From Fimbriosthenelais zetlandica (Eukaryota), in contig OZ365109.1 in assembly GCA_977030845.1 (NCBI GenBank), positions 62,062,001-62,126,000 on the forward strand: 64,000 bases of DNA. The letters run 5' to 3'. Below, one piece after another: positions 50,536-62,642 of this stretch. How positions within the stretch are numbered: position 1 is the stretch's first letter; each line of letters begins with the position of its first letter. The notes beneath the pieces are model-generated. The model did no database searches. It saw only the letters and a program-made list of their open reading frames with translations, and was not told the origin of the DNA. The position numbers and the translations under genes are program-made.

Positions 50536-53500
50536 ATGATGGATGACATAGATGACATACAACCTGGCAGACATAGCCCACCTCCCATGTCACCAGATGA
50601 GGACGATGATGCTCTATCACCCATTCATACAGCGGGAGAAACAGATACAGAAGGTTTAGATAAGATAGAAGACGGGGAGCATCCAGATGTACCCGTAGTG
50701 GAACCAGAGGCCGTACCAGACGAGGAACTCCTTCATGAAGATCTAGATACCACAGGAGCAGATCCTGTTAGGGTTAAACCCAAGACAGCTTCATTAAGAC
50801 TTCAGACCAGAGGAGGCCGAATGAGAGCTGACCAGGTTAAAAAAAATTATTGTTTTATTTCCCCCAAAAGGACCTTTTCATGAATGAATACGTTTTTCCT
50901 TTATCTCAATAAGTAATTTGTTTAATAGTAAAATGAGTGTTTTTTTTAAAATTTTATATTTAATTCTATATTTAGTTGTACTAAGATCATTTGATCTCTT
51001 TCTAAATTTGTAATTATTCATTATTTGCGGTGGTAAATTTGGCTTTTGATATAAATTACTAAAATTGGTAATTTTTAGGTAAATGAATGTCCAAAGTGCA
51101 ATCTAGATATCTACATATAAAGTTGATCACATCTTATTTTATAATATCACCTGAATGATTTTCTTTTACATTGTCTATTTTCAGGACCGTATAAAATCCA
51201 TATTGAAGGAGGCTATAGTCAGTATGTGTAATTCGGGCCTCTACTACCAGACAGAAATGAGAATAGAGGGACTTCTCGGTATCACGCTGGACCGACGTGA
51301 GGTCATCATTGTTAACGTCCATGACATCGTACGGACGTCAGAATCTGATGATGAATACACGTAAGTTAAATGAGTACAGTAACACAAAAGGCTTAAAAAG
51401 AAAAGGTAAATAATTACACGTAAGTTAAATGAATAAGGTAAAAAAAATAAACGTAACTAAGTTAAATGAGTACGTGGATAAGTTGAAGACACGTAAAATG
51501 AATAGGCCTCTCCACATATTATAAATAAATCAATTTATTCACGTCAGTTAAATTAATACGACTCCCGTAAATTTCAAGACGGGTATTTTAAGTCAACAAA
51601 CAGCTGATGGATTCTAATTTAATGGACCTGAAGCATTTTCGATCAAATCTGAAAGTAGGCCTAAATAACTCATTGGTTTGAGGATGAAAGCTATCATTAT
51701 GTTATTACTTATTTCATGTACCATTATTTCGAAATCCAAATTGATAATAATATTGAATAATTTTTTAGTACCAAGATCCCATACACACCAACCATCCACA
51801 AAAGAAAGATGACGAGACCGTGGCGTATAGCTGGCCGTCAGTACATTAAGCGTGGTCCTGGACGCCGACCCAAATACGACCCTGGCGAACCCCTCCTCAA
51901 ACGCCGGAAAGACACCGAAGATGGGGATGAGGTGGACATCTTTGGTACCTCCAGCTCGCGAGGGGAGGCTGGGATGACAGGCTCGAGTCCCCGTCAGGGA
52001 CAAGAAAACCAAGATGGAGATGGGAGCCACTCTGAGGAAGGAAATCTGAATAATCTAGCCCAGGCTGTGGCCTGGTATACTTCAGTGGACGAGGAGGCCA
52101 AGTCCGGTGATGGTTCATCTTTACTCAATGATCACGTGAGTGTATGTGAAAATGATTTAATTCTCTCTATCAAATTAATCAATAAAATTAATTATGTCAG
52201 AAACAGAAAATCTGAATTATTAGAAATTTAACTGTAGGTCTAGTATCATTTGAGTAGCCTAACCCAATATTATCATTTCCATTATTTTTTAGTTCTAGAA
52301 AATTGATTGATGGATTAGGGACATAATTTTTACATTATATTTCTAACTTTCAATAACTATTTTATCGTATTATAAATTTGCCTTATATGAATTCTCCAAA
52401 TTTACAAAACTAGCTTTATTATACAATATGATAATATCTTTCCAGGGTTTACCTCTACCTGATCCACTTACAAGCCCGGACAAAGCAGAGATGATCAGGT
52501 TCCTGAATGAACAAGTGGGTCGGGGATATGCCCGGAAACAAGAAAAGAAGAAAAAACGTGGTGAATACAACAACTACACTGCAGAAATGCGTGCCAAGAT
52601 CGGCCAGTTTGCTGTGGAACACGGCATAGGTAAAGCCATGAAGCATTTTAAGACTTTGTTTGGTCGGCCGATTAGTGAGAGCACAGTCAGGTGTATGAGA
52701 AAGGCGTATCTTGATGCTAAGAGGGAAACTCAGGCTGACGAGGTGGTGGTACTGCCTAAAAAAGACAGAGGCAGGCCGCTGATGCTGAAGGAATATGACA
52801 CCGATGTCATGGATTATATTGAAAACCTGAGGAGAAATGGAGCTCAGATTAATGTTCAAATCGTCATGGATGCAGCCAGAGGAGTTCTCCTTCATAAAGA
52901 CAAAGCAAAGCTGAAGGAATTCGGAGGCTCCATTGAAATCACAAAGGCCTGGGCTCAGTCATTTATGGCCAGAAAGGGATTGCATGGTCTTGGTAGACGA
53001 AGGAGAAAATCGGAAGGACAGAAAAGTCCAAAGAAGAAGAAAGATCAGCAAAGCAGCAGCAATCCAGGAGAGTCCTCACATATTACACATCAACAACAAC
53101 AGCAACAGCAGCAGCAGCAACAACAACAGCAACAACAACAACCACCAACACATCAACCTCAACACACACAAGGTCTACCTCAACAACAGCAACAGCAACA
53201 ACCACCACCACCACCTCACCATCCAGGAGCTGCTGTACCCGGCCAACAGCAAGGACAACCCAACACCCACCAACAAAACCTCTCACAACACCCAACACCA
53301 GTCCACACTCCGCATTCTCAGGACCATGAAGCCCATCTACACAATCTAGATGTGTGTACCCCACCACCGGCACACCAAGATCAGAGAAATAACACTATGG
53401 TATTCCCTGAGAGACAGATGCACCCAGGTGCTGATCCAATGCATGATCACAGGAATGCTATGGTGTTTGGGGATAGGCAGCCTCATCATGGTGAACATGT

Positions 53501-53672
53501 AATGCACGATCACACAGGGAGGATGGTCTTCCCGGATCGACACCCAATGACCACAGCGAGCATGCAGGATCCACATCATATGTTCTTCCCTGAAAGACTC
53601 AACCTGAACCCAGTTCCTGCTGCTCATTGTTCATTGTGGCCCTCACAAAATATACATCATAAAAATAACTGA
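50536..53672 (+). CDS. Gene A: putative transcription factor (GLLGITxD N-terminal domain + AT-hook-like motif + domesticated pogo/DDE_1-type transposase HTH region + polyQ/His-rich tail), about 689 aa
   Basis: Exons 50536-50835, 51185-51360, 51769-52135 and 52446-53672. All introns are GT-AG with matching phases (0, 2, 0). The joined 2070 nt give one open frame (RMRADQ|DRIKSIL...DEYT|TKIPY...LLNDH|GLPLPDP...HHKNN*). An acceptor at 50500-50501 precedes the ATG. Confidence 0.85.
51185..51331 (+). other. GLLGITxD N-terminal domain, copy in gene A
   Basis: DRIKSILKEAIVSMCNSGLYYQTEMRIEGLLGITLDRREVIIVNVHDIV aligns without gaps to 57634-57780 with 20/49 identities (hand count). Confidence 0.85.
52446..52982 (+). 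other. Transposase-derived bipartite HTH DNA-binding region (pogo/Tc1-mariner superfamily, DDE_1 type; second HTH is CENP-B/HTH_Tnp_Tc5-like)
   Basis: The motif order LPDP...KKRGEYNNYTAEMRAKIGQFAVEHG...SESTVR...LPKKDRGRPL...YIENLRRNGAQINVQIVMDAARG...GGSIEITKAWAQSFMARKG matches my recollection of the N-terminal half of marine-invertebrate DDE_1 transposases. No DDE region follows. Confidence 0.75.
53091..53141 (+). repeat. CAA/CAG repeat encoding 17 consecutive Gln in gene A
   Basis: Read directly: mixed caa/cag codons in frame with exon 4. Confidence 0.95.
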
Positions 53673-54042
53673 GACCAGTGGACACCAGTAGATAATGTAA
53701 GACCACCTGTGGAGGATATTATGATGAGGCATGGCACTGTCAAATACGAACCTCCTTGAAATTTATGACCCTTTACAAGGTGTACTATAATTCCTCATAA
53801 AGGATTGGGCATGCAAATTCATAATAATATTTTTACGTTTAAGTGCCACTTATTTGCTGAGTACTGGTCTTATTTTTCTACTGGAATGTCCATGAAGTAA
53901 TCGGAATTATATTGCAAATTTTTCTTTTGGAGACAAAAATATTGAATCAACTCCTTCCAATGCGCTGATTGTGTTCAAGTTTAGTTGATGGTTCTATAAT
54001 TATTGTTGCATGGATGCAATCGATTTATCCTCAGGAAATGCT

Positions 54043-54094
54043 CAATTTGGTATCGTGGTCACACAATTTGGTATCGTGGTCACACAATTTGGTA
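54043..54094 (+). repeat. 21-bp tandem repeat, about 2.5 copies
   Basis: CAATTTGGTATCGTGGTCACA twice plus a partial copy. Confidence 0.9.
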
Positions 54095-56639
54095 ACCATA
54101 AGCGAAGATGGCAAACGTTCAGTGGGATTTATCCCTGGTGGGATACAATAATACCAGTCGAGTTCTCCATGTGTCTGTATCAGGGCTGATTTGAAAATGT
54201 TCACTGTCACATTGTTAATGTGTTAGTCTGGTATAAAACCATCTATGTTGTCTGTCAAACGAGGTTCATATATATGATAAAGCCTGTAGGCCTATTCATT
54301 GTTCTTTTCTACCATTGAATTATACGCTTATTTCTGTTTGTTGAAAAAGTATCACGTTGAATTACATAATACCGTATGTAATAGAAATCTACTTAATGAT
54401 ATTGAATTATATTCGGACAAATGATATTAAATTACATATGAGCAGATGTAATTTATATGGGATAGAATTCAAATGGTAATCTTTGTAAGGTGAATTAGAA
54501 ATGGATACTGTAACCTTGATGTGGTCAAATTTTTATTACGTAGGCTTATTTAGACATACCGGTACCTGTGTGCGCAGCAAACTATGATATGCAAGAACAG
54601 CTATGTAATGTACTCAATATGGAAAAAGATAGCTTTAATGGCCTATAGATGCCAAATCGTTTAATAGAATCCTCAGGGTTGAAACAAGACCTTTGTCACC
54701 AATGTACTTGATCTGATCCGTAGCCTTGTGCACTACATAATAATTATAATCTAGGTTGCACAGGCTTAAATTACTATAGATATTGTATATGTATATTAGT
54801 ACCACTAACACTTACTGAAATATAATGAGAACTGTATCCTTTATAACGTTTTGATATAATGAAATGCCCTCTATGAAAAGTAGAATTAACAAATAATTGT
54901 TAATCTATACATGTATAATGTACATTTTTAATGCTGAGTAGGACCATTTAGTCCTTACCAAAGTGCTTAGTTATTCATTGATTATTTATAGATGAATATT
55001 AAATTTGTAATATTAATTTGGATATTTAATCTCCTCAATCCCACTAATGATTAGCTATAAATACTAAATCGCTATGATTAGCAATAAAATGTAGTTTACT
55101 CGTAGGTCCGCGATGCTTTATGTATTCTAGTTGTACCCAGACATTTTCATGTACCGATATATGAAGAATAAGTTAATTTAACAGAAAGCTACTGGCACTG
55201 TTACCTCAAATACATACCTCAAATTATACAAAGAAATAGCTTTCTAATTTCCTTGTATTTCAGATATTGATAAATGTTGATAAGAATGTATCGTAGTGTA
55301 AGAAGAATCTAATCCTGTTCTGTCTCGTTCACTACCTTATGTATATTACTGGTACACACATTTTTAATATTACCGGATTATTCGGACGCTGAGTTACTTG
55401 TTTCAATCCTTAACCTTCAGAATTGTCGAGAATGGCTGGAGAACTTGGAAAACATGAACTCTTTTAGTCGATCGTTGCATTCCAAAGCAAACTTAAATTG
55501 TTCGTCCTTTGCTTATTTCTTATCATGTCGGGGTTTCTTTTGTAAGTTTCGATGATAAATCTTTATTATACGTTTTACTTTTTTATATTTTATGTTATAT
55601 CGCAGGTTATATATATACTATATATATCTATTTTGTCTTTCAACCGGTTTTAAAAATTAAAATCAGACAAACTCCTGTTACTATAATAATTATAGGTTAT
55701 ATGTAAGCCTACTTGATTTCCTTCAATGTTTCTTTTGTTATAATAACAGTAGGATTCCGTGTAGAATTCAATGGGGTCCTCTTCTGGTTCATTCATTTTG
55801 ATATTAAAATTTTGTTATGAATTGTATTAGATCTATTAGTTCTTTAGTTATAAGTGTATAGATCTATCCCTTTAGAATCTTTGATGAAGGCTTTATGATC
55901 AAGTGTCCATTTATGTAAGTCAACATACAAGTCTGTTTCTGTGGTCCATGCATAAATTTAAGGCTATTTAGTTGTTATAATGATAATTATATTTCCTACA
56001 TACAGCCTCTAACTTTTCGGATTTTAGTCCTTAGGCCTATAAATATAATTGTCGCTGATAACGTTGAAAGCTTTTACATATTGAACGATTCCATCTTGCT
56101 TGATAGATCCATAGAAGTAGACTTCTATGATAGATCTGCGCTGAGCGCCCGATATCAGTTTTGTTTTCCTATTGTTTATGATTGTTTGGAGATACCTGAT
56201 TGATTGATAGACCTGCCTACTTATATTGATGTTTAAACCAAAAAATCTATAAGTTAGGCCTACTCAATCTGTACAGGAAAATATTTCAGATACCAATTAA
56301 ACTTATTTCTATAGAACATCTTTCTTGTTCATTATTATGAATCCAACTCCCTCGAATACCCCTGTGGGCTCCTGTTAAGTGGAATGTTGATAGGGGTATT
56401 GTTAGTTAGAATATCAGTTGGGCCTAATAATTGGTGATTGTAGCATGTATAGGTCTATACTATAGTATAGCCTACCTCAGGCTAGGCTAAAACCTAGGCA
56501 TATTCCCGTCCCTGCAATAGACTTAAACTAGCCCATGTTTCATAAATAATGTGTAATTTCGGATAAACAATACAGTTTGATGGGAAATTGAACTTTTTCA
56601 TGACACAAATTTCAGTTCGCCTAGCCCTCAGCTCCGACA

Positions 56640-56907
56640 CCACCTTATGACATGCGGGCGGGAAATGAGTGGGCCTGAGATCACCGCACAGTGGCGCCCT
56701 CTGTATCAGTGTGGTGAACTACAGGCATCAGCTCTCCGCCATGAAAACAACCCTCGACAGAGTCTGTCTTTCCACGTTATGATCGTCAATAACCGTCCGC
56801 CCTGCCTCCAATTCCTACTTACTATCGCCAGACACAATCTAACAGCCCCATGGTTCAACCGACAAGTTCAAATTCGGAATTTTCTCTGCTGGATCTTCGG
56901 CGGAACA
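56640..56907 (+). promoter_or_regulatory. Candidate promoter and non-coding first exon of gene B
   Basis: CpG-rich patch with GC box GCGGGCGGGA (about 56654-56663), a CTCF-like motif (56689-56705) and a donor ACA|GTGAGT at 56907/56908. Confidence 0.5.
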
Positions 56908-57603
56908 GTGAGTAGTTGAGCGCTTGTTCTTGTTTTACCCTATTTTCGCCCAATGCGGGCTGGGAAAGAATAGCCCCTATGCTATGGCCTATCTGGCAAT
57001 CATATGGTTATGTGTTATGTATTCACAGAAGAACTATTTATGGTCAGTTTTTGACAGGTAGCTGCTTAAATGTAACTCTCAAACAGCATACTATAATCTA
57101 TAATAACTGTTTTAACTTGTAATTTTTAATTCAATGCCAATGGTCAATGGACCTTTTTATCCCGTCATCATAAATAATGAATAACATGATTACCTGCTCA
57201 TTTGACAGGAAGAAAAATACAGGATAGAGATCTAAGTTTGGGCTTTACTATAGCTCTTGGGCCAGTTGGGGTGCTACTCTATCATACCATGAGACTCCAT
57301 ATGATCGGTCTATCACTATGACCTATCAGTATCGCCCACGGGATTCCTTTGATCTTCTTACTTTAGAACTAAGTTCTATGCTTATGCCTTTTGGCTATGT
57401 AACGTTATGGTTGCCTTGTACTTGTAGCCCGCATAGCTGGTCCCACTCACATTCCTGGCATAAAGGATGGACATTTTATTTTAAAATTAATTTTTAAGTA
57501 GGCCTACAGTTTTACTATAATAAGGATATTCGGTTTTAAGTAGACACCATGGCATGGGTCTAAACTATTCAAGTAACGAATCTAATTTTTTTCAGGTGTT
57601 ACA

Positions 57604-59472
57604 ATGAGTGCAGAGAGGGAGAAATCTTCCAAAGAGCGTGTGAGGGCCATCCTGTCTGAGTCAGTCTCCGTCCTCTGTCGCACCATGCTTCAATACGATG
57701 CCGAGCTGAGTATCCGCGGTCTGCTGGGAATCACAGTGGATAACCGAGATGTATTCCTGGTAGACATCCTGGAGACGGTTCGCGGTCGAAACCACGATGT
57801 ATCAGGCGTAGCTGTCATAGACCCGGGTAAAGAGGACTCAGAGGCAGACATGTTAGTGGTGGACGACTCGGACATGGAAGAGAAAGGACATGCTAATTCT
57901 CTAAACCACTCTCACCAAAACCCACACATGCAGGAAAAACCTGGCAAATGTGCTGAGAACATGACCATCTCTCAAGGCCAGACTCAGGCGGCTCCGAACA
58001 ATGAACAAGCACATGGAGAAGTTGTACAAATAATGAACCCTGAATCTCTAGCCAGGCAACCTATAGGTCTAAAAGAACTTGGTGATGCAGCTTTTGCCAG
58101 AAGTATTAGTCACTTCCATCAGCAGATTGCTAATAAAGCAGTGAACATGAAATCAAATGTCAGTATGCAGGGTGCGATGAGTAGGGTGGCAGAGGATGCC
58201 AATGATATGTCAAACGCCAATGTCATCAGTTCACAGGCTTTGAATATGTCAACGACTACTCAAGTGGAATCAGTATCAACAGAGCAGAATGATGATCCTA
58301 ACTTCAGGCTACAGAATCATGAGACTGAGAGACAAAGTGTTGTCCACAAACATGAGGATGATACGAGGGAGGGTGAGCCAGAGCAGCAAACCACTATGTA
58401 TACACTATGTGCTTGTGAAAGTACTGGAGATGCTGCGGACTGTTCAATGAAGCATAATGCTAACCAGGCTCAGACCGTGTGGAGTCATAGTGAGACAGGT
58501 CAGCGTTCAACGGACTATGTGGCAGTAGCCTCCCAAGCCAATGTTACACCTATAAGCCAGTCAACCACTGTCCCTGTATCCCAAGTCCACACAGCAGCTA
58601 ACTCTTCCAACCCCGTCCTCACCACCCAAGACCCTTATCAACTCTGGAACAAGGCAAACAGTCAACAGCAGAACACCACTATGACTACATCAGCTAATTG
58701 GTCCAGTCTTCCTATAGCTGCTGCCGCCGCCGCTGCTGCAGCTGCCTCTTCTGTCCCAACCACAACTTGGTCTGGTCAGACACAAAGTCAGGCACAAACC
58801 GTGACTGTTGCTACTAGTACTGAAGTGATGGCTTCAGCTCCAATACAGTCACTCTACTCCTCGTTGCCAGAGACTATCAGCAGTGCCATATTACATACTA
58901 CTTACTCCCAAGGAGGCAGCACCCCAAAAAACTTGAGAGGTGAAGGGGTTTTTCCATGCAAACTCTGCAGTCGTGTTTTCACCTACAAGAAGTCTAAAGC
59001 CAGACACATGAAGAGACATCTGGGACAGTTTTACACATGTGAAGTGTGTAAAAAGACTTTATGTCGCAAAGATGTTCTCGCACGCCATCAACACAACGTT
59101 CACGGCATCAAGATAGAGACGAGTGGAGAGACGAGCAAGTCTCCGCAGAAGTCGCAGGGCGAGGAGCCCACCACCATTTCATTGCTTTCACAGGCCAACG
59201 AAGTTGCTGCTAATAATACTTATCCGACATCGCAGTCTGCAGGACACGGACAGCGAAGCTATGAAGCAGTGGAGTTTACCAACACCAACACACCTCAACT
59301 GACAGTACCCAGGCCACCTCTTGCTGCTGTAGTCACCTCCCTCTCTCAACCCATCCAGTCCTTCCTCACACTCAATCACACTGCTATACAAGCCCATCAG
59401 AGCCCCAATCAAACCAGCGTCCAGTCAAATGTACAGGCATCCCTTCATCATGGCGCTAGTCCATCGACATAA
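57604..59472 (+). CDS. Gene B: C2H2 zinc-finger protein with GLLGITxD N-terminal domain, 622 aa, single coding exon
   Basis: 622-aa ORF. Two fingers, FPCKLCSRVFTYKKSKARHMKRH and YTCEVCKKTLCRKDVLARHQHNVH, at about 58951-59103. Poly-Ala at 58717-58746. An acceptor TTTTTTTCAG ends at 57595, 8 nt before the ATG. Confidence 0.9.
   Translation: MSAEREKSSKERVRAILSESVSVLCRTMLQYDAELSIRGLLGITVDNRDVFLVDILETVRGRNHDVSGVAVIDPGKEDSEADMLVVDDSDMEEKGHANSLNHSHQNPHMQEKPGKCAENMTISQGQTQAAPNNEQAHGEVVQIMNPESLARQPIGLKELGDAAFARSISHFHQQIANKAVNMKSNVSMQGAMSRVAEDANDMSNANVISSQALNMSTTTQVESVSTEQNDDPNFRLQNHETERQSVVHKHEDDTREGEPEQQTTMYTLCACESTGDAADCSMKHNANQAQTVWSHSETGQRSTDYVAVASQANVTPISQSTTVPVSQVHTAANSSNPVLTTQDPYQLWNKANSQQQNTTMTTSANWSSLPIAAAAAAAAAASSVPTTTWSGQTQSQAQTVTVATSTEVMASAPIQSLYSSLPETISSAILHTTYSQGGSTPKNLRGEGVFPCKLCSRVFTYKKSKARHMKRHLGQFYTCEVCKKTLCRKDVLARHQHNVHGIKIETSGETSKSPQKSQGEEPTTISLLSQANEVAANNTYPTSQSAGHGQRSYEAVEFTNTNTPQLTVPRPPLAAVVTSLSQPIQSFLTLNHTAIQAHQSPNQTSVQSNVQASLHHGASPST
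57634..57780 (+). other. GLLGITxD N-terminal domain, copy in gene B
   Basis: ERVRAILSESVSVLCRTMLQYDAELSIRGLLGITVDNRDVFLVDILETV, homologous to 51185-51331. Confidence 0.85.
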
Positions 59473-60357: not shown

Positions 60358-62642
60358 TTATTCTAACTGGATGCCTATCTCGGTTTCAAGATCTAGATCA
60401 TCGTCCTCTAATTCTCCGTCCTCCATTTCTAATTCTCCAGTTTTACTGGCCTCAGTCTCTAGGGCTGCTTTAGGAACATTGTCGCTTTTGATAGCAGAGA
60501 ACACATCCTGTGGTCGCTTGACAGCTGCTAACTGGACACGTTTAGCTTTTAGTATTTTCCTTTTGCGTCTGTAAAATAATACAAAAAGGATATTATAAAA
60601 TAGTTTTTGAATTATTTTGATAAAGGATAGAGCTATGCACACATTTTAAGTAGTAAATAATGAAATATATTTTAATATTTTTAGGAACACCTATTACGAA
60701 TGTCTCTGTTCTGGAGCATTTACTCACTGTTTGTCAAGTTCCCGTTCTTCCTCAAATATTTTGTCCAAATCTTCCTTCCGGATATGTCGATCCTCACGGA
60801 GGAGGAAAAGAAAGACTCCACCGGGAGTTCTTCTCCGGGATCCATTCTGAAGTTTTGCCAAGGGAAAATCATCAACAGTTCAAATCATTTTAAATTATTT
60901 AAAAATTCTAAAGTCCATATGAAATTCATTCTAGAGTGTGAATTCGTAATTCTTACCTTAATCATCAGGCCCCCTGTGGATTCAATAGTTATTGTTTCAG
61001 ACATCAAATCGACAGCCCTTCTCGGTCCAAGGATATCTACCACACGAGCTGAAAAATATGCAACAATGGATCTTAGAACAAAATACATATATGAAACAAC
61101 ATTGTTGTAAAAAATGTCAATTATAAATATATCAGTGATTTATTATGCCAACTTTTACAGATGTAATAATTTCATCACCTGTAATATGACTGAATTATAA
61201 TTTAGAATTGAGAACAAGAATCTTCAACTTACTCATTAAACCGACTTTTGGCTCCTTCAGATTGTGTGTCAAGGCAGCAACTATCTTTTCTGTGGAATCC
61301 GTTTCAGTCACTTGTATCAAATCAAGTGGTAGGGTCTCACTTCCAGTTGTTTCACGCTTCTTCCCCAACCTTTCCTTTACATTTTTCTTTTTGTTCTTAT
61401 CACGTTTTCGTTTAAGAGTATACATGACTAATTCTTTCTGGAAGTCATCGACTTCACCTCTCTTACTCTGAGGTCGACTCTTATGGTATCTTCTATCTTC
61501 ACCACTATCAGAATCGCTGTCACTTTTACATGAACCAAGTCTATCTTTTACCGAAAGCTTGGGTAACTTTTTCTCAGGAATAGTCCCAAAGGTTTCAATT
61601 TCAAACAATCCTTCTTGGTCCTTGGCCTCTTTGTCTTCCGTATCAGGGCTCTTACTTTCCATTTCCACTTCGACAGGCTTTTTTTGCTCTTTTGTTTCCT
61701 TACTTTCTTCATCATCCCCAGATTCACCAAAGAGATCATCGTCGTATGTAATATTAGAGTGTCTGGGTAATTGATAAGCCTCCACATTTCTATAACTGAG
61801 AGCAGATAAGTCTTTTTCGACTGCAAAACTTCCTATTTCTTGGGTCAGCACCTGTTCTGCTAAAACATTACCCCAAACGTTTTTTGGCTTTGATTGAGAT
61901 TGCTGTGCTTTGCTCCTATCAAGATTCCAGACGTCTTTCCCGCTTGCACCCTTTCCCTCAGTGTTTTGAAAGCCCAGATCCGAGGGACCACGATGTTTAG
62001 ATTGCAACAGAGGGTTTTTGAAATTTGTCCGGCTGTCTTGCGGCTTGTAGCATTTACGTTTGGGAAAACCTTCGCCCTCAACATCACTGTCACTTTCTTC
62101 AGATTCAGATGAAAGTCCCGGAACTTGACTTTTTCTAAAAGCTTCAACTGGAGTCGGGGCAGATGGTCTTGGTAGGCATACAGGATTAAATGACGGCGCA
62201 GCACCTGCTTTGGTATGCTGAAAGAACAACAGAATGGTAATATAGTTTTATAATTTATAGAAAATGTGGTAAACTCTAAATATAAATTTAACACATTTTT
62301 ATCACCCCCTCCTCCTGGCCTGGATCCAGAATTTTTCAGAAGGGTTGGGGGAGCCGGGTTAGGGTTAGGGTAATACGGTTAACCGTCAAAAAATGGGAGG
62401 GGTGGGGTTCAGTCTGAAGAACACTCTGATTCTGAACAGTTAGTTAGCCTACAACTTTACTTGGTGATTCTGATTTTCTGAACAAATTCGAATACAAACT
62501 CGGTGGTATCATTACAAATAATTGAAATGCATTTAAAAATGAACACCGTAAACCACATGAATACATTAGAAACTCTCCAAATTTGACAAAAACAGACCTG
62601 TTCTGTTTCACTCCCCGAGTCAGACAGCTCTCCGTCCTCCAT
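60358..62642 (-). CDS. PHAX: Phosphorylated adapter RNA export protein, 483 aa
   Basis: Exons 62642-62598, 62217-61233, 61048-60957, 60846-60728 and 60568-60358. All introns are GT-AG with consistent phases, 1452 nt in total. Diagnostic motifs: MEDGELSDS, KNVWGNVLAEQ, VKERLG, LKEPK..LM, RVVDILG...A, and NGSRRRTPGGVFL of the PHAX RNA-binding domain. Confidence 0.96.

What the first reader, a model, noticed from the sequence alone, without database searches (positions are those of the whole stretch)
51185..59472. Tandem paralogues share one ~49-aa N-terminal module but carry unrelated DNA-binding domains (a KRAB/ZAD/BTB-like system)
Seen in the sequence: genes A and B, 4 kb apart on the same strand, share only the ungapped module R-x3-IL-x-E-x5-C-x3-L-x-Y-x2-E-x2-I-x-GLLGIT-x-D-x-R-x-V (20/49 identical). 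It is paired with an AT-hook plus transposase HTH in A and with two C2H2 fingers in B. I recall similar sequences at the N-termini of uncharacterised mollusc and annelid proteins but know no named family for them. Inference: a lineage-restricted dimerisation or cofactor-recruitment module shuffled onto different DNA readers, as KRAB and SCAN are in vertebrates and ZAD and BTB in insects. A and B might heterodimerise.
Basis: partly seen in the sequence, partly recalled or inferred. Interest (0 to 1): 0.8.

Follow-up and report, generated by a model that had tools for sequence, protein, structure and literature searches.

The report
Unnamed N-terminal domain of zinc-finger factors
Two neighbouring genes share a real, about 55-residue folded N-terminal domain that no database names; it heads a large family of mollusc and annelid zinc-finger transcription factors, and in one old gene it sits on a transposase-type DNA-binding region instead.

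Summary
Genes A and B share an ungapped module: 21/49 residues identical, BLASTP E 1e-14.

It is not peculiar to these two genes.
- A profile of the module finds 33-36 copies in this 447-Mb genome. Of the 33 strong matches, 29 lie on one chromosome.
- It finds 1,860 clusters (50% identity) in public data.
- AlphaFold DB and ESM Atlas matches are mollusc and annelid proteins, mostly with C2H2 fingers.
- AlphaFold2 models it confidently (pLDDT 88) as one helix plus a long beta-hairpin.

The usual architecture is module, disordered linker, then C2H2 finger pairs. B is a typical member and is conserved full-length in three other species.

A is the one exception found. It is a single-copy gene with orthologues, and its fingers are replaced by a probable pogo/CENP-B-type double helix-turn-helix without a transposase catalytic domain. 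This parallels vertebrate POGK.

A and B are separate old lineages, not recent duplicates.

What the module does is untested; self-association is my best guess. The A/B complex prediction gave no answer, and no RNA runs were listed.

Earlier scan notes cover A's last exon and a lola-like finger-exon array elsewhere in this genome. None covers this module on other DNA.

The parts
50536..50835 (+). Possible first coding exon of gene A (about 100 acidic residues). Uncertain.
   Evidence: The open frame ends in phase 0 at a weak donor (GTTAAA). Joining it to 51185 gives an intact 689-residue frame and adds one more residue (D) to the module match. It is not conserved in the orthologous locus L036. 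The alternative start is the in-frame ATG at 51155.
51185..51360 (+). Gene A exon carrying the shared N-terminal module (module 51188-51334).
   Evidence: Canonical acceptor (pyrimidine tract then CAG) and GTAAGT donor. Profile match E 1e-26. 39% identical to B. An orthologous module exon lies 2.3 kb upstream of the HTH exon in L036.
51769..52135 (+). Gene A exon 3: basic, AT-hook-like stretch (K-R-G-P-G-R-R-P-K at 51848-51874), then an acidic low-complexity stretch.
   Evidence: Canonical acceptor and GTGAGT donor, frame kept. No Pfam hit. The transcript-like orthologue P0164 has G-P-G-R-P at the matching place.
52446..53672 (+). Gene A last exon. It holds a double helix-turn-helix of pogo/CENP-B type (about 52548-52985), then a polyQ/His-rich tail with four M-[VF]-F-[PG]-[ED]-R repeats (53397-53597), then the stop. 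There is no DDE domain.
   Evidence: Pfam HTH_Tnp_Tc5 is sub-threshold in A and in all 9 orthologues (best E 0.002). The top Swiss-Prot fold matches are POGK, CENP-B, TIGD2 and JRK, all weak. An Atlas cluster that is 100% HTH_Tnp_Tc5 aligns to residues 110-192. hhalign against this genome's own pogo DNA-binding regions is colinear, P 0.005. The region is single copy in the genome. Orthologues are 48-66% identical.
57604..59472 (+). Gene B: a single open frame of 622 residues (module, linker, two C2H2 fingers).
   Evidence: Full-length orthologues at 80, 57 and 45% identity.
57631..57789 (+). Module of gene B (residues 10-62).
   Evidence: Profile match E 1e-23. 77-87% of positions are invariant across four species, against 0-40% in the linker. 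The AlphaFold2 model has pLDDT 88: helix 2-21, strands 27-38 and 42-53.
57790..57873 (+). Conserved acidic extension after B's module, with hydrophobic-then-acidic stretches (V-A-V-I-D, L-V-V-D-D-S-D) that look like SUMO-interaction motifs.
   Evidence: 87% of positions are invariant in the four B orthologues. The motif reading is my inference.
58951..59103 (+). Two C2H2 zinc fingers of gene B (58951-59019 and 59032-59103).
   Evidence: Pfam zf-C2H2 scores 24.9 bits against a cut-off of 25.2, in two stretches. Both finger patterns are complete. 87% of positions are invariant in the orthologues. The orthologues carry precomputed PF00096 hits.

Best explanation
The shared segment is an autonomous, roughly 55-residue folded domain: one amphipathic helix packed on a long beta-hairpin. 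It defines a large, so far unnamed family of lophotrochozoan (mollusc and annelid) transcription factors. The standard family member has the domain at the extreme N-terminus, a long disordered linker with SUMO-consensus (psi-K-x-E) sites and other short motifs, and one or more pairs of C2H2 fingers. B is such a member, with everything in one exon. A is an old, single-copy offshoot in which the finger exons have been replaced by the DNA-binding front end of a pogo/Tigger-type transposase, without its catalytic domain. Shown here: the domain's reality, size, position, distribution and partners. Inferred: its job. My best guess is that it is a self-association (dimerisation) domain that pairs two DNA-binding tails, as BTB, ZAD and SCAN do, so that family members bind DNA as homo- or heterodimers. 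Rough odds: real domain family on DNA-binding proteins 0.9 or more; A's tail is pogo/CENP-B type 0.75-0.8; the domain acts by self-association about 0.45.
For: Reality and constraint: A versus B gives E 1e-14. In four B orthologues the module and the fingers are 77-87% invariant while the linker is 0-40%. Family size: 33-36 copies in this genome. 1,860 clusters at E<=1e-3 and 1,350 at E<=1e-10 in 1.84 billion representatives. The module starts within the first 12 residues in 130 of the 150 best hits. Taxa and partners: the significant AlphaFold DB cluster matches are all C2H2 or uncharacterised proteins whose accessions I recognise as annelid or mollusc. Atlas clusters are Mollusca and Annelida, with zf-C2H2 in 46-81% of members. 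Fingers lie downstream of 10 of the 14 paralogues for which sequence beyond the first exon and its start of intron was scanned. C2H2 is the only Pfam domain among the 150 best hits. Fold: pLDDT 88, helix plus hairpin. For self-association (inference): both strands carry consecutive hydrophobic residues (G-L-L-G-I; V-F-L-V), so both faces of the hairpin are hydrophobic while one helix can cover only one face. Seven of the 150 best hits carry two modules in tandem, some only about 5-18 residues apart. Position and context match known finger-associated dimerisation domains. Gene A: the splice model gives an intact frame. The module exon lies upstream of the HTH exon in another species. P0164 is one continuous 593-residue frame with module, G-R-P stretch and HTH, whereas the close relative's genomic loci L037/L038 have introns there.
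Confidence: 0.5

Rival explanations
1. The module is a cofactor-recruitment (repression) domain rather than a dimeriser. Like KRAB, it would dock one conserved corepressor. A specific version: its most conserved stretch ([FLM]-S-I-E-G-L-[LI]-G) acts as an engrailed-homology-1 (eh1)-like Groucho/TLE-binding motif.
For: The core of strand 1 fits the eh1 pattern F-x-I-x-x-I-L in the subset of members that have F there; my eh1-type regular expression hit 21 of 109 family members, inside the module. eh1-like motifs occur at the N-termini of C2H2 repressors such as ces-1 and ZNF312 (PMC1310626). The linkers are rich in SUMO-consensus sites, typical of repressors.
Against: Conservation covers 55 residues with a confident fold, not a short linear motif. 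The eh1-like stretch is modelled as a buried beta-strand, whereas eh1 peptides bind as short exposed helices (my knowledge of the TLE1 WD40 complexes). The first position is L in most members, M in A and L in B, rather than the near-invariant F of eh1. No test with Groucho was possible.
Confidence: 0.25
2. The module has no separable function. It is simply the conserved N-terminus of one expanded gene family, kept by descent, and A is a chance exon-capture product of no special meaning.
For: Apart from A, only one kind of partner (C2H2) is seen. The family looks like ordinary local duplication on one chromosome, with several pairs 5-20 kb apart.
Against: The module is the most conserved part of B, together with the fingers, across species that differ by up to 55% overall. 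It is kept in A's lineage after the fingers were lost, in at least three species groups. It folds confidently alone. It occurs duplicated in tandem in some proteins. All of this points to a function of its own.
Confidence: 0.1
3. The module comes from a mobile element protein and its many copies are transposon relics.
For: Retroelement genes lie near some homologous loci. A's tail is transposase-derived.
Against: Copies are only 40-55% identical to one another. They share intron phase (a phase-0 donor after ..T-Q) and have host-gene structure with finger exons. A and B have conserved orthologues. A's HTH is single copy.
Confidence: 0.03

Closest known systems
BTB/POZ-zinc-finger factors of insects (lola, tramtrack, broad, fruitless) and vertebrate ZBTB proteins
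   Same: An N-terminal protein-interaction domain is followed by a long linker and a C-terminal pair of C2H2 fingers. At several paralogues here one module exon is followed by several stop-terminated finger-pair exons in the same phase, as at lola.
   Different: There is no sequence or fold similarity to BTB: no Pfam hit and 55 residues against about 120. Alternative use of the finger exons is not shown, because no RNA was available.
ZAD (zinc-finger-associated domain) of arthropod C2H2 proteins
   Same: A lineage-restricted N-terminal domain of a large, locally duplicated C2H2 family. ZAD forms homodimers (PMC7913770, abstract seen).
   Different: ZAD is built on four zinc-binding cysteines, whereas the module has one conserved cysteine. 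There is no Pfam hit.
KRAB and POGK (pogo transposable element with KRAB domain)
   Same: A finger-family N-terminal module is also found fused to a pogo-type DNA-binding region. POGK is the top Swiss-Prot fold match of A's tail.
   Different: KRAB is tetrapod-restricted, is unrelated in sequence, and works by recruiting TRIM28. POGK keeps a DDE-type region, whereas A has only the DNA-binding part.
SCAN domain and the fish FiNZ domain
   Same: Lineage-specific N-terminal domains that mark expanded C2H2 subfamilies. FiNZ genes are concentrated on one chromosome arm (10.1101/2022.11.29.518450), as this family is on one chromosome.
   Different: SCAN is all-helical and about 80 residues long. FiNZ is a 28-residue acidic stretch. 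Neither resembles the helix-plus-hairpin module.
CENP-B / Tigger / Jerky DNA-binding region (HTH_psq or CENP-B_N plus HTH_Tnp_Tc5)
   Same: A's last exon has the same two-HTH layout and weak but concordant sequence and fold matches.
   Different: It is below Pfam's threshold, has no DDE_1 domain, and is preceded by the module instead of standing at the N-terminus.

Membership tests
KRAB (PF01352) | Match to the KRAB A/B-box profile | tested here: not met
   No Pfam hit for A, B or 27 modules at E<=1.
ZAD (PF07776) | Four conserved zinc-coordinating cysteines and a profile match | tested here: not met
   Only one nearly invariant cysteine in 27-76 aligned modules. No Pfam hit.
BTB/POZ (PF00651) | About 120-residue alpha/beta fold and a profile match | tested here: not met
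   The module is about 55 residues, one helix plus a hairpin. No Pfam hit and no PDB fold match.
SCAN (PF02023) | All-helical domain of about 80 residues and a profile match | tested here: not met
   The model contains two long strands. No Pfam hit.
C2H2 zinc finger (gene B) | C-x2-4-C-x12-H-x3-5-H pattern and a Pfam zf-C2H2 match | tested here: met
   Two complete patterns. Pfam gives 24.9 bits, just under the 25.2 cut-off, E 2.5e-5. The orthologues have PF00096 on record.
pogo/CENP-B-type DNA-binding region (gene A) | HTH_Tnp_Tc5 match above Pfam's gathering score | tested here: not met
   16.3 bits against a cut-off of 22.2. The match is sub-threshold but present in all 10 sequences (best E 0.002).
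pogo/CENP-B-type DNA-binding region (gene A) | Two consecutive three-helix HTH units with fold similarity to CENP-B(1-129) | tested here: inconclusive
   The model (pLDDT 66) is helical with the right layout. POGK, CENP-B, TIGD2 and JRK lead the Swiss-Prot list, but at E 0.08-0.5. 1hlv ranks 7 in PDB at E 1.8. hhalign against this genome's own pogo elements gives P 0.005.
pogo/Tigger transposase | DDE_1 catalytic domain | tested here: not met
   After the HTH there is only polyQ/His-rich sequence up to the stop. No Pfam DDE hit.
AT-hook (PF02178) | R-G-R-P core flanked by basic residues | tested here: not met
   A has G-R-R-P, not G-R-P, and no Pfam hit. Orthologue P0164 has P-G-R-P.
eh1 Groucho-binding motif | Short F-x-I-x-x-I-L motif in a disordered region | tested here: inconclusive
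   The pattern fits in members with F at the first position. A has M and B has L, and the stretch is a modelled beta-strand inside a folded domain.
lola/mod(mdg4)-type locus (paralogues, not A or B) | One common 5' exon spliced alternatively to many terminal finger exons, shown by transcripts | not testable with these tools
   Same-phase donor and acceptors and stop-terminated finger-pair exons are seen. No RNA runs were listed.

The most novel reading that the evidence does not exclude
Molluscs and annelids have their own, so far undescribed, zinc-finger-associated oligomerisation domain with a new small fold. It would be the lophotrochozoan counterpart of BTB, ZAD, SCAN and KRAB. It marks a transcription-factor family of thousands of genes that is concentrated on one chromosome here. 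Many of its loci may work like lola: one module exon and several alternative finger-pair endings. It has been co-opted once onto a domesticated pogo DNA-binding region.
Probability: 0.4. Interest if true: 0.75.

Novelty: new variant of a known kind. Interest (0 to 1): 0.6.

Why it matters
N-terminal domains such as KRAB, BTB, ZAD and SCAN determine how the largest transcription-factor class in animals acts, and each marks a lineage-specific expansion. No equivalent has been described for molluscs and annelids, as far as I could find. Their genomes hold hundreds to thousands of C2H2 genes that are annotated only as 'zinc finger protein'. A defined domain with a profile, a confident model and clear boundaries would allow several things. 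These genes could be classified. The domain's partner (itself or a corepressor) could be found by simple binding tests. One could ask whether the family is tied to transposon control, as KRAB and FiNZ families are. Gene A adds a second, independent example of a finger-family module fused to a pogo DNA-binding region, after POGK. This suggests such captures are a recurrent route to new regulators.

Tried and rejected
1. Complex prediction on the A and B modules returned 'no answer': score 0.01, both chains unfolded at pLDDT about 40, and the alignments were not used. It is evidence neither for nor against binding.

2. The look-up of sequencing runs was called twice, on gene A and on A's last exon. 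No run was listed, so read laying was not used and no splice junction in this genome is confirmed by RNA.

3. The protein-atlas search by features, on B residues 1-70 and on P0087, gave no usable hit.

4. The word-index homologue search with a consensus-like member found only 5 proteins, none named. The listing of cluster members gave no informative names.

5. Sm/LSm likeness of the G-L-L-G-I-T-L-D stretch was considered and dropped. The glycine and aspartate spacing differs, and no Pfam or fold hit supports it.

6. CtBP-type P-x-D-L-S motifs occur in only 4 of 26 first exons, so they are not a family feature.

7. Conserved A-B synteny was looked for. B's orthologue locus L039 has no A orthologue within 10 kb upstream, and A's orthologue locus L036 has no B within 10 kb downstream. 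Synteny is therefore not shown.

Smaller requests succeeded.

9. Of six literature searches, five looked for a description of this domain (two by exact sequence words or accession numbers) and found none. The sixth retrieved the eh1 paper. This is not proof that no description exists.
Full report
**1. The observation**

Gene B is a single open frame, 57604-59472, of 622 residues.

Gene A is split into exons:
- The module exon starts at 51185, after a pyrimidine tract and CAG, and ends at a GTAAGT donor at 51360.
- Next come exon 51769-52135 and a last exon 52446-53672. All their splice sites are canonical.
- Joined to an upstream acidic exon (50536-50835), these exons give an intact 689-residue frame.
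- That first join is uncertain. The donor is weak (GTTAAA), the exon is not seen in an orthologous locus, and an in-frame ATG at 51155 is an alternative start.

The two modules are 21/49 identical without gaps. BLASTP gives 22/56 identical, E 1e-14. Nothing else in the two proteins is similar.

**2. The module belongs to a large family, not just these two genes**

In this genome:
- A search of the 447-Mb genome with B's module gave 33 matches.
- A profile of 27 copies gave 36 matches.
- Of the 33 strong matches, 29 lie on contig C1, which is 16% of the assembly (binomial 2e-19).
- They are spread from 3 to 70 Mb, with several pairs 5-20 kb apart.
- In every copy the module opens a long first exon.

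In public data:
- The same profile, run against 1.84 billion representative proteins, found 1,860 clusters at E<=1e-3 and 1,350 at E<=1e-10.
- In 130 of the 150 best hits the module starts within the first 12 residues.
- Seven of the 150 carry two modules in tandem.

**3. No known family or fold matches**

- Pfam gives nothing for A, B, 27 modules or the 150 best hits, apart from C2H2 fingers.
- A profile search of PDB sequences gives nothing.
- AlphaFold2 with a 74-sequence alignment models the module at pLDDT 88: helix 2-21 and two 12-residue strands, 27-38 and 42-53.
- Foldseek against PDB has its best E at 0.35.

In AlphaFold DB clusters, the only significant matches are N-termini of 'C2H2-type domain-containing' or uncharacterised proteins. 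I recognise their accessions as Capitella, Helobdella, Dimorphilus and Biomphalaria; this is from memory, because the organism column was blank.

The ESM Atlas search states the taxa outright. The top clusters are Mollusca and Annelida, with zf-C2H2 in 46-81% of members. Of six literature searches, five looked for a description of this domain (two by exact sequence words or accession numbers) and found none. The sixth retrieved the eh1 paper.

**4. The standard architecture of the family**

B has the module, a variable linker and two C2H2 fingers.
- Its three full-length orthologues are 80, 57 and 45% identical.
- The module (plus a 30-residue acidic extension) and the fingers are 77-87% invariant, whereas the linker is 0-40% invariant.

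Among the paralogues:
- For 14 family members sequence well beyond the first exon was scanned: B, three paralogues with fingers inside the first 1.5-2.6 kb, and ten for which a further 4 kb was fetched (L010 was also read to 7.4 kb). 10 have C2H2 fingers on the same strand.
- In the other 4, no fingers were found within 5.5 kb.
- First exons typically end at a phase-0 donor after ..T-Q.
- They are followed by two or three separate exons. Each has a phase-0 acceptor and two to four fingers (mostly two or three), ends in its own stop, and has no consensus (GTRAG) donor after the last finger.
- This is the layout of lola-type loci with alternative endings.

Evidence on the splicing:
- One related-species pair shows the first-exon donor in use: P0009 is unspliced and P0155 is spliced to a two-finger exon.
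- Alternative use of the endings is not shown.
- An earlier scan note (s1-228801) describes a 13-exon array of this kind on another contig.

The linkers are enriched in psi-K-x-E sumoylation-consensus sites: 22 of 26 first exons, against 3-6 in shuffles. They also carry a P-G-C-S-x-W motif and a P-P-x-K-R motif.

**5. Gene A is the exception**

Its last exon has no fingers. It has a basic stretch followed by two helix-turn-helix units.

Evidence that these are of pogo/CENP-B type:
- Pfam HTH_Tnp_Tc5 matches A and all nine orthologues, but below threshold (best E 0.002).
- The best Swiss-Prot fold matches are POGK, CENP-B, TIGD2 and Jerky, all weak (E 0.08-0.5).
- CENP-B(1-129) and Abp1 appear in the PDB list.
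- An Atlas cluster that is 100% HTH_Tnp_Tc5 aligns to the second unit.
- A profile-profile comparison with six pogo-type DNA-binding regions taken from this same genome is colinear, P 0.005.

I take 'pogo/CENP-B-type double HTH' as likely (about 0.75-0.8) but not proven. There is no DDE domain, and the region is single copy in the genome, so this is an old domestication.

Evidence that the module and the HTH belong to one gene:
- In another species (L036, 66% identical HTH), a module exon lies 2.3 kb upstream on the same strand.
- P0164 is one continuous 593-residue frame holding the module, a G-P-G-R-P stretch and the HTH. The genomic loci of a close relative have introns there, so P0164 is most likely from a spliced transcript.

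The 'AT-hook' of A reads G-R-R-P and gets no Pfam hit. I call it AT-hook-like only.

**6. The relation of A and B**

In a tree of modules, A with its two orthologues forms one clade (98/95) and B with its three orthologues forms another (99/99). The two are not resolved as sisters. They are old, separately conserved members of the family that lie side by side, as several other family pairs do. They are not recent tandem copies. Conserved A-B synteny could not be shown.

**7. What the module does**

Nothing here measures function. I favour self-association (about 0.45) for these reasons:
- Both strands have runs of consecutive hydrophobic residues, so both faces of the hairpin are hydrophobic, while the single helix can cover only one face.
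- Natural proteins with two modules in tandem exist.
- The domain's position matches BTB, ZAD and SCAN.

The main rival (about 0.25) is corepressor docking. One version is that the conserved [FLM]-S-I-E-G-L-[LI]-G stretch is an eh1-like Groucho motif. Such motifs do occur at the N-termini of C2H2 repressors (PMC1310626). Against this version, the stretch sits in a folded strand and usually lacks the phenylalanine.

The complex prediction for A plus B gave no answer.

**8. Verdict**

It is an unnamed domain family of lophotrochozoan zinc-finger factors. Gene A is a single conserved case of the module on a transposase-derived DNA reader, a parallel to POGK. It is a new family within a known kind of system. 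Its mechanism is open and easy to test.

Noticed in passing
L048 (G000:C1:63062900-63066960, minus strand), L043, L045, L047, L040: Behind paralogous module exons lie two or three separate exons. Each has two to four C2H2 fingers (mostly two or three), a phase-0 acceptor and its own stop codon. The module exons end at phase-0 donors. This looks like lola-type alternative endings, but no RNA was available to test it.
   Followed up: partly
G000 contig C1, 3.4-69.5 Mb: 29 of the 33 strong module copies in the genome lie on one chromosome-sized contig that makes up 16% of the assembly (binomial 2e-19). They include a group of five within 0.75 Mb at 33.4-34.2 Mb and several pairs 5-20 kb apart.
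   Followed up: partly
Linkers of family members (L002-L030 first exons; P0001-P0150): psi-K-x-E sumoylation-consensus sites, often [VI]-[VI]-K-E-E followed by acidic residues, occur in 22 of 26 first exons against 3-6 in shuffles. A P-G-C-S-x-W motif near the exon end (11 of 26) and a P-P-x-K-R motif (7 of 26) also recur.
   Followed up: partly
P0001-P0006, P0057; L034:9373-10872: Seven of the 150 best database hits have two modules in tandem in one protein, some only about 5-18 residues apart.
   Followed up: no
window 57790-57873: Directly after B's module lies a 28-residue acidic stretch with V-A-V-I-D and L-V-V-D-D-S-D. It is as conserved as the module itself in four species and resembles SUMO-interaction motifs.
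   Followed up: no
window 53397-53597: The tail of gene A holds four repeats, about 20 residues apart, each starting M-[VF]-F-[PG]-[ED]-R, in a His/Gln-rich context after a long polyQ run. The repeats are absent from the orthologues.
   Followed up: partly
window 61195-62229 (minus strand): An open frame of 344 residues encodes a Ser/Asp/Lys-rich, probably nuclear, protein. It was not examined.
   Followed up: no
L036:18089-21425; L037:13636-17838: Retroelement genes (RVT_1, RNase H, integrase) lie a few kb downstream of A's orthologues in other species. This may explain why A-B synteny is not seen there.
   Followed up: no
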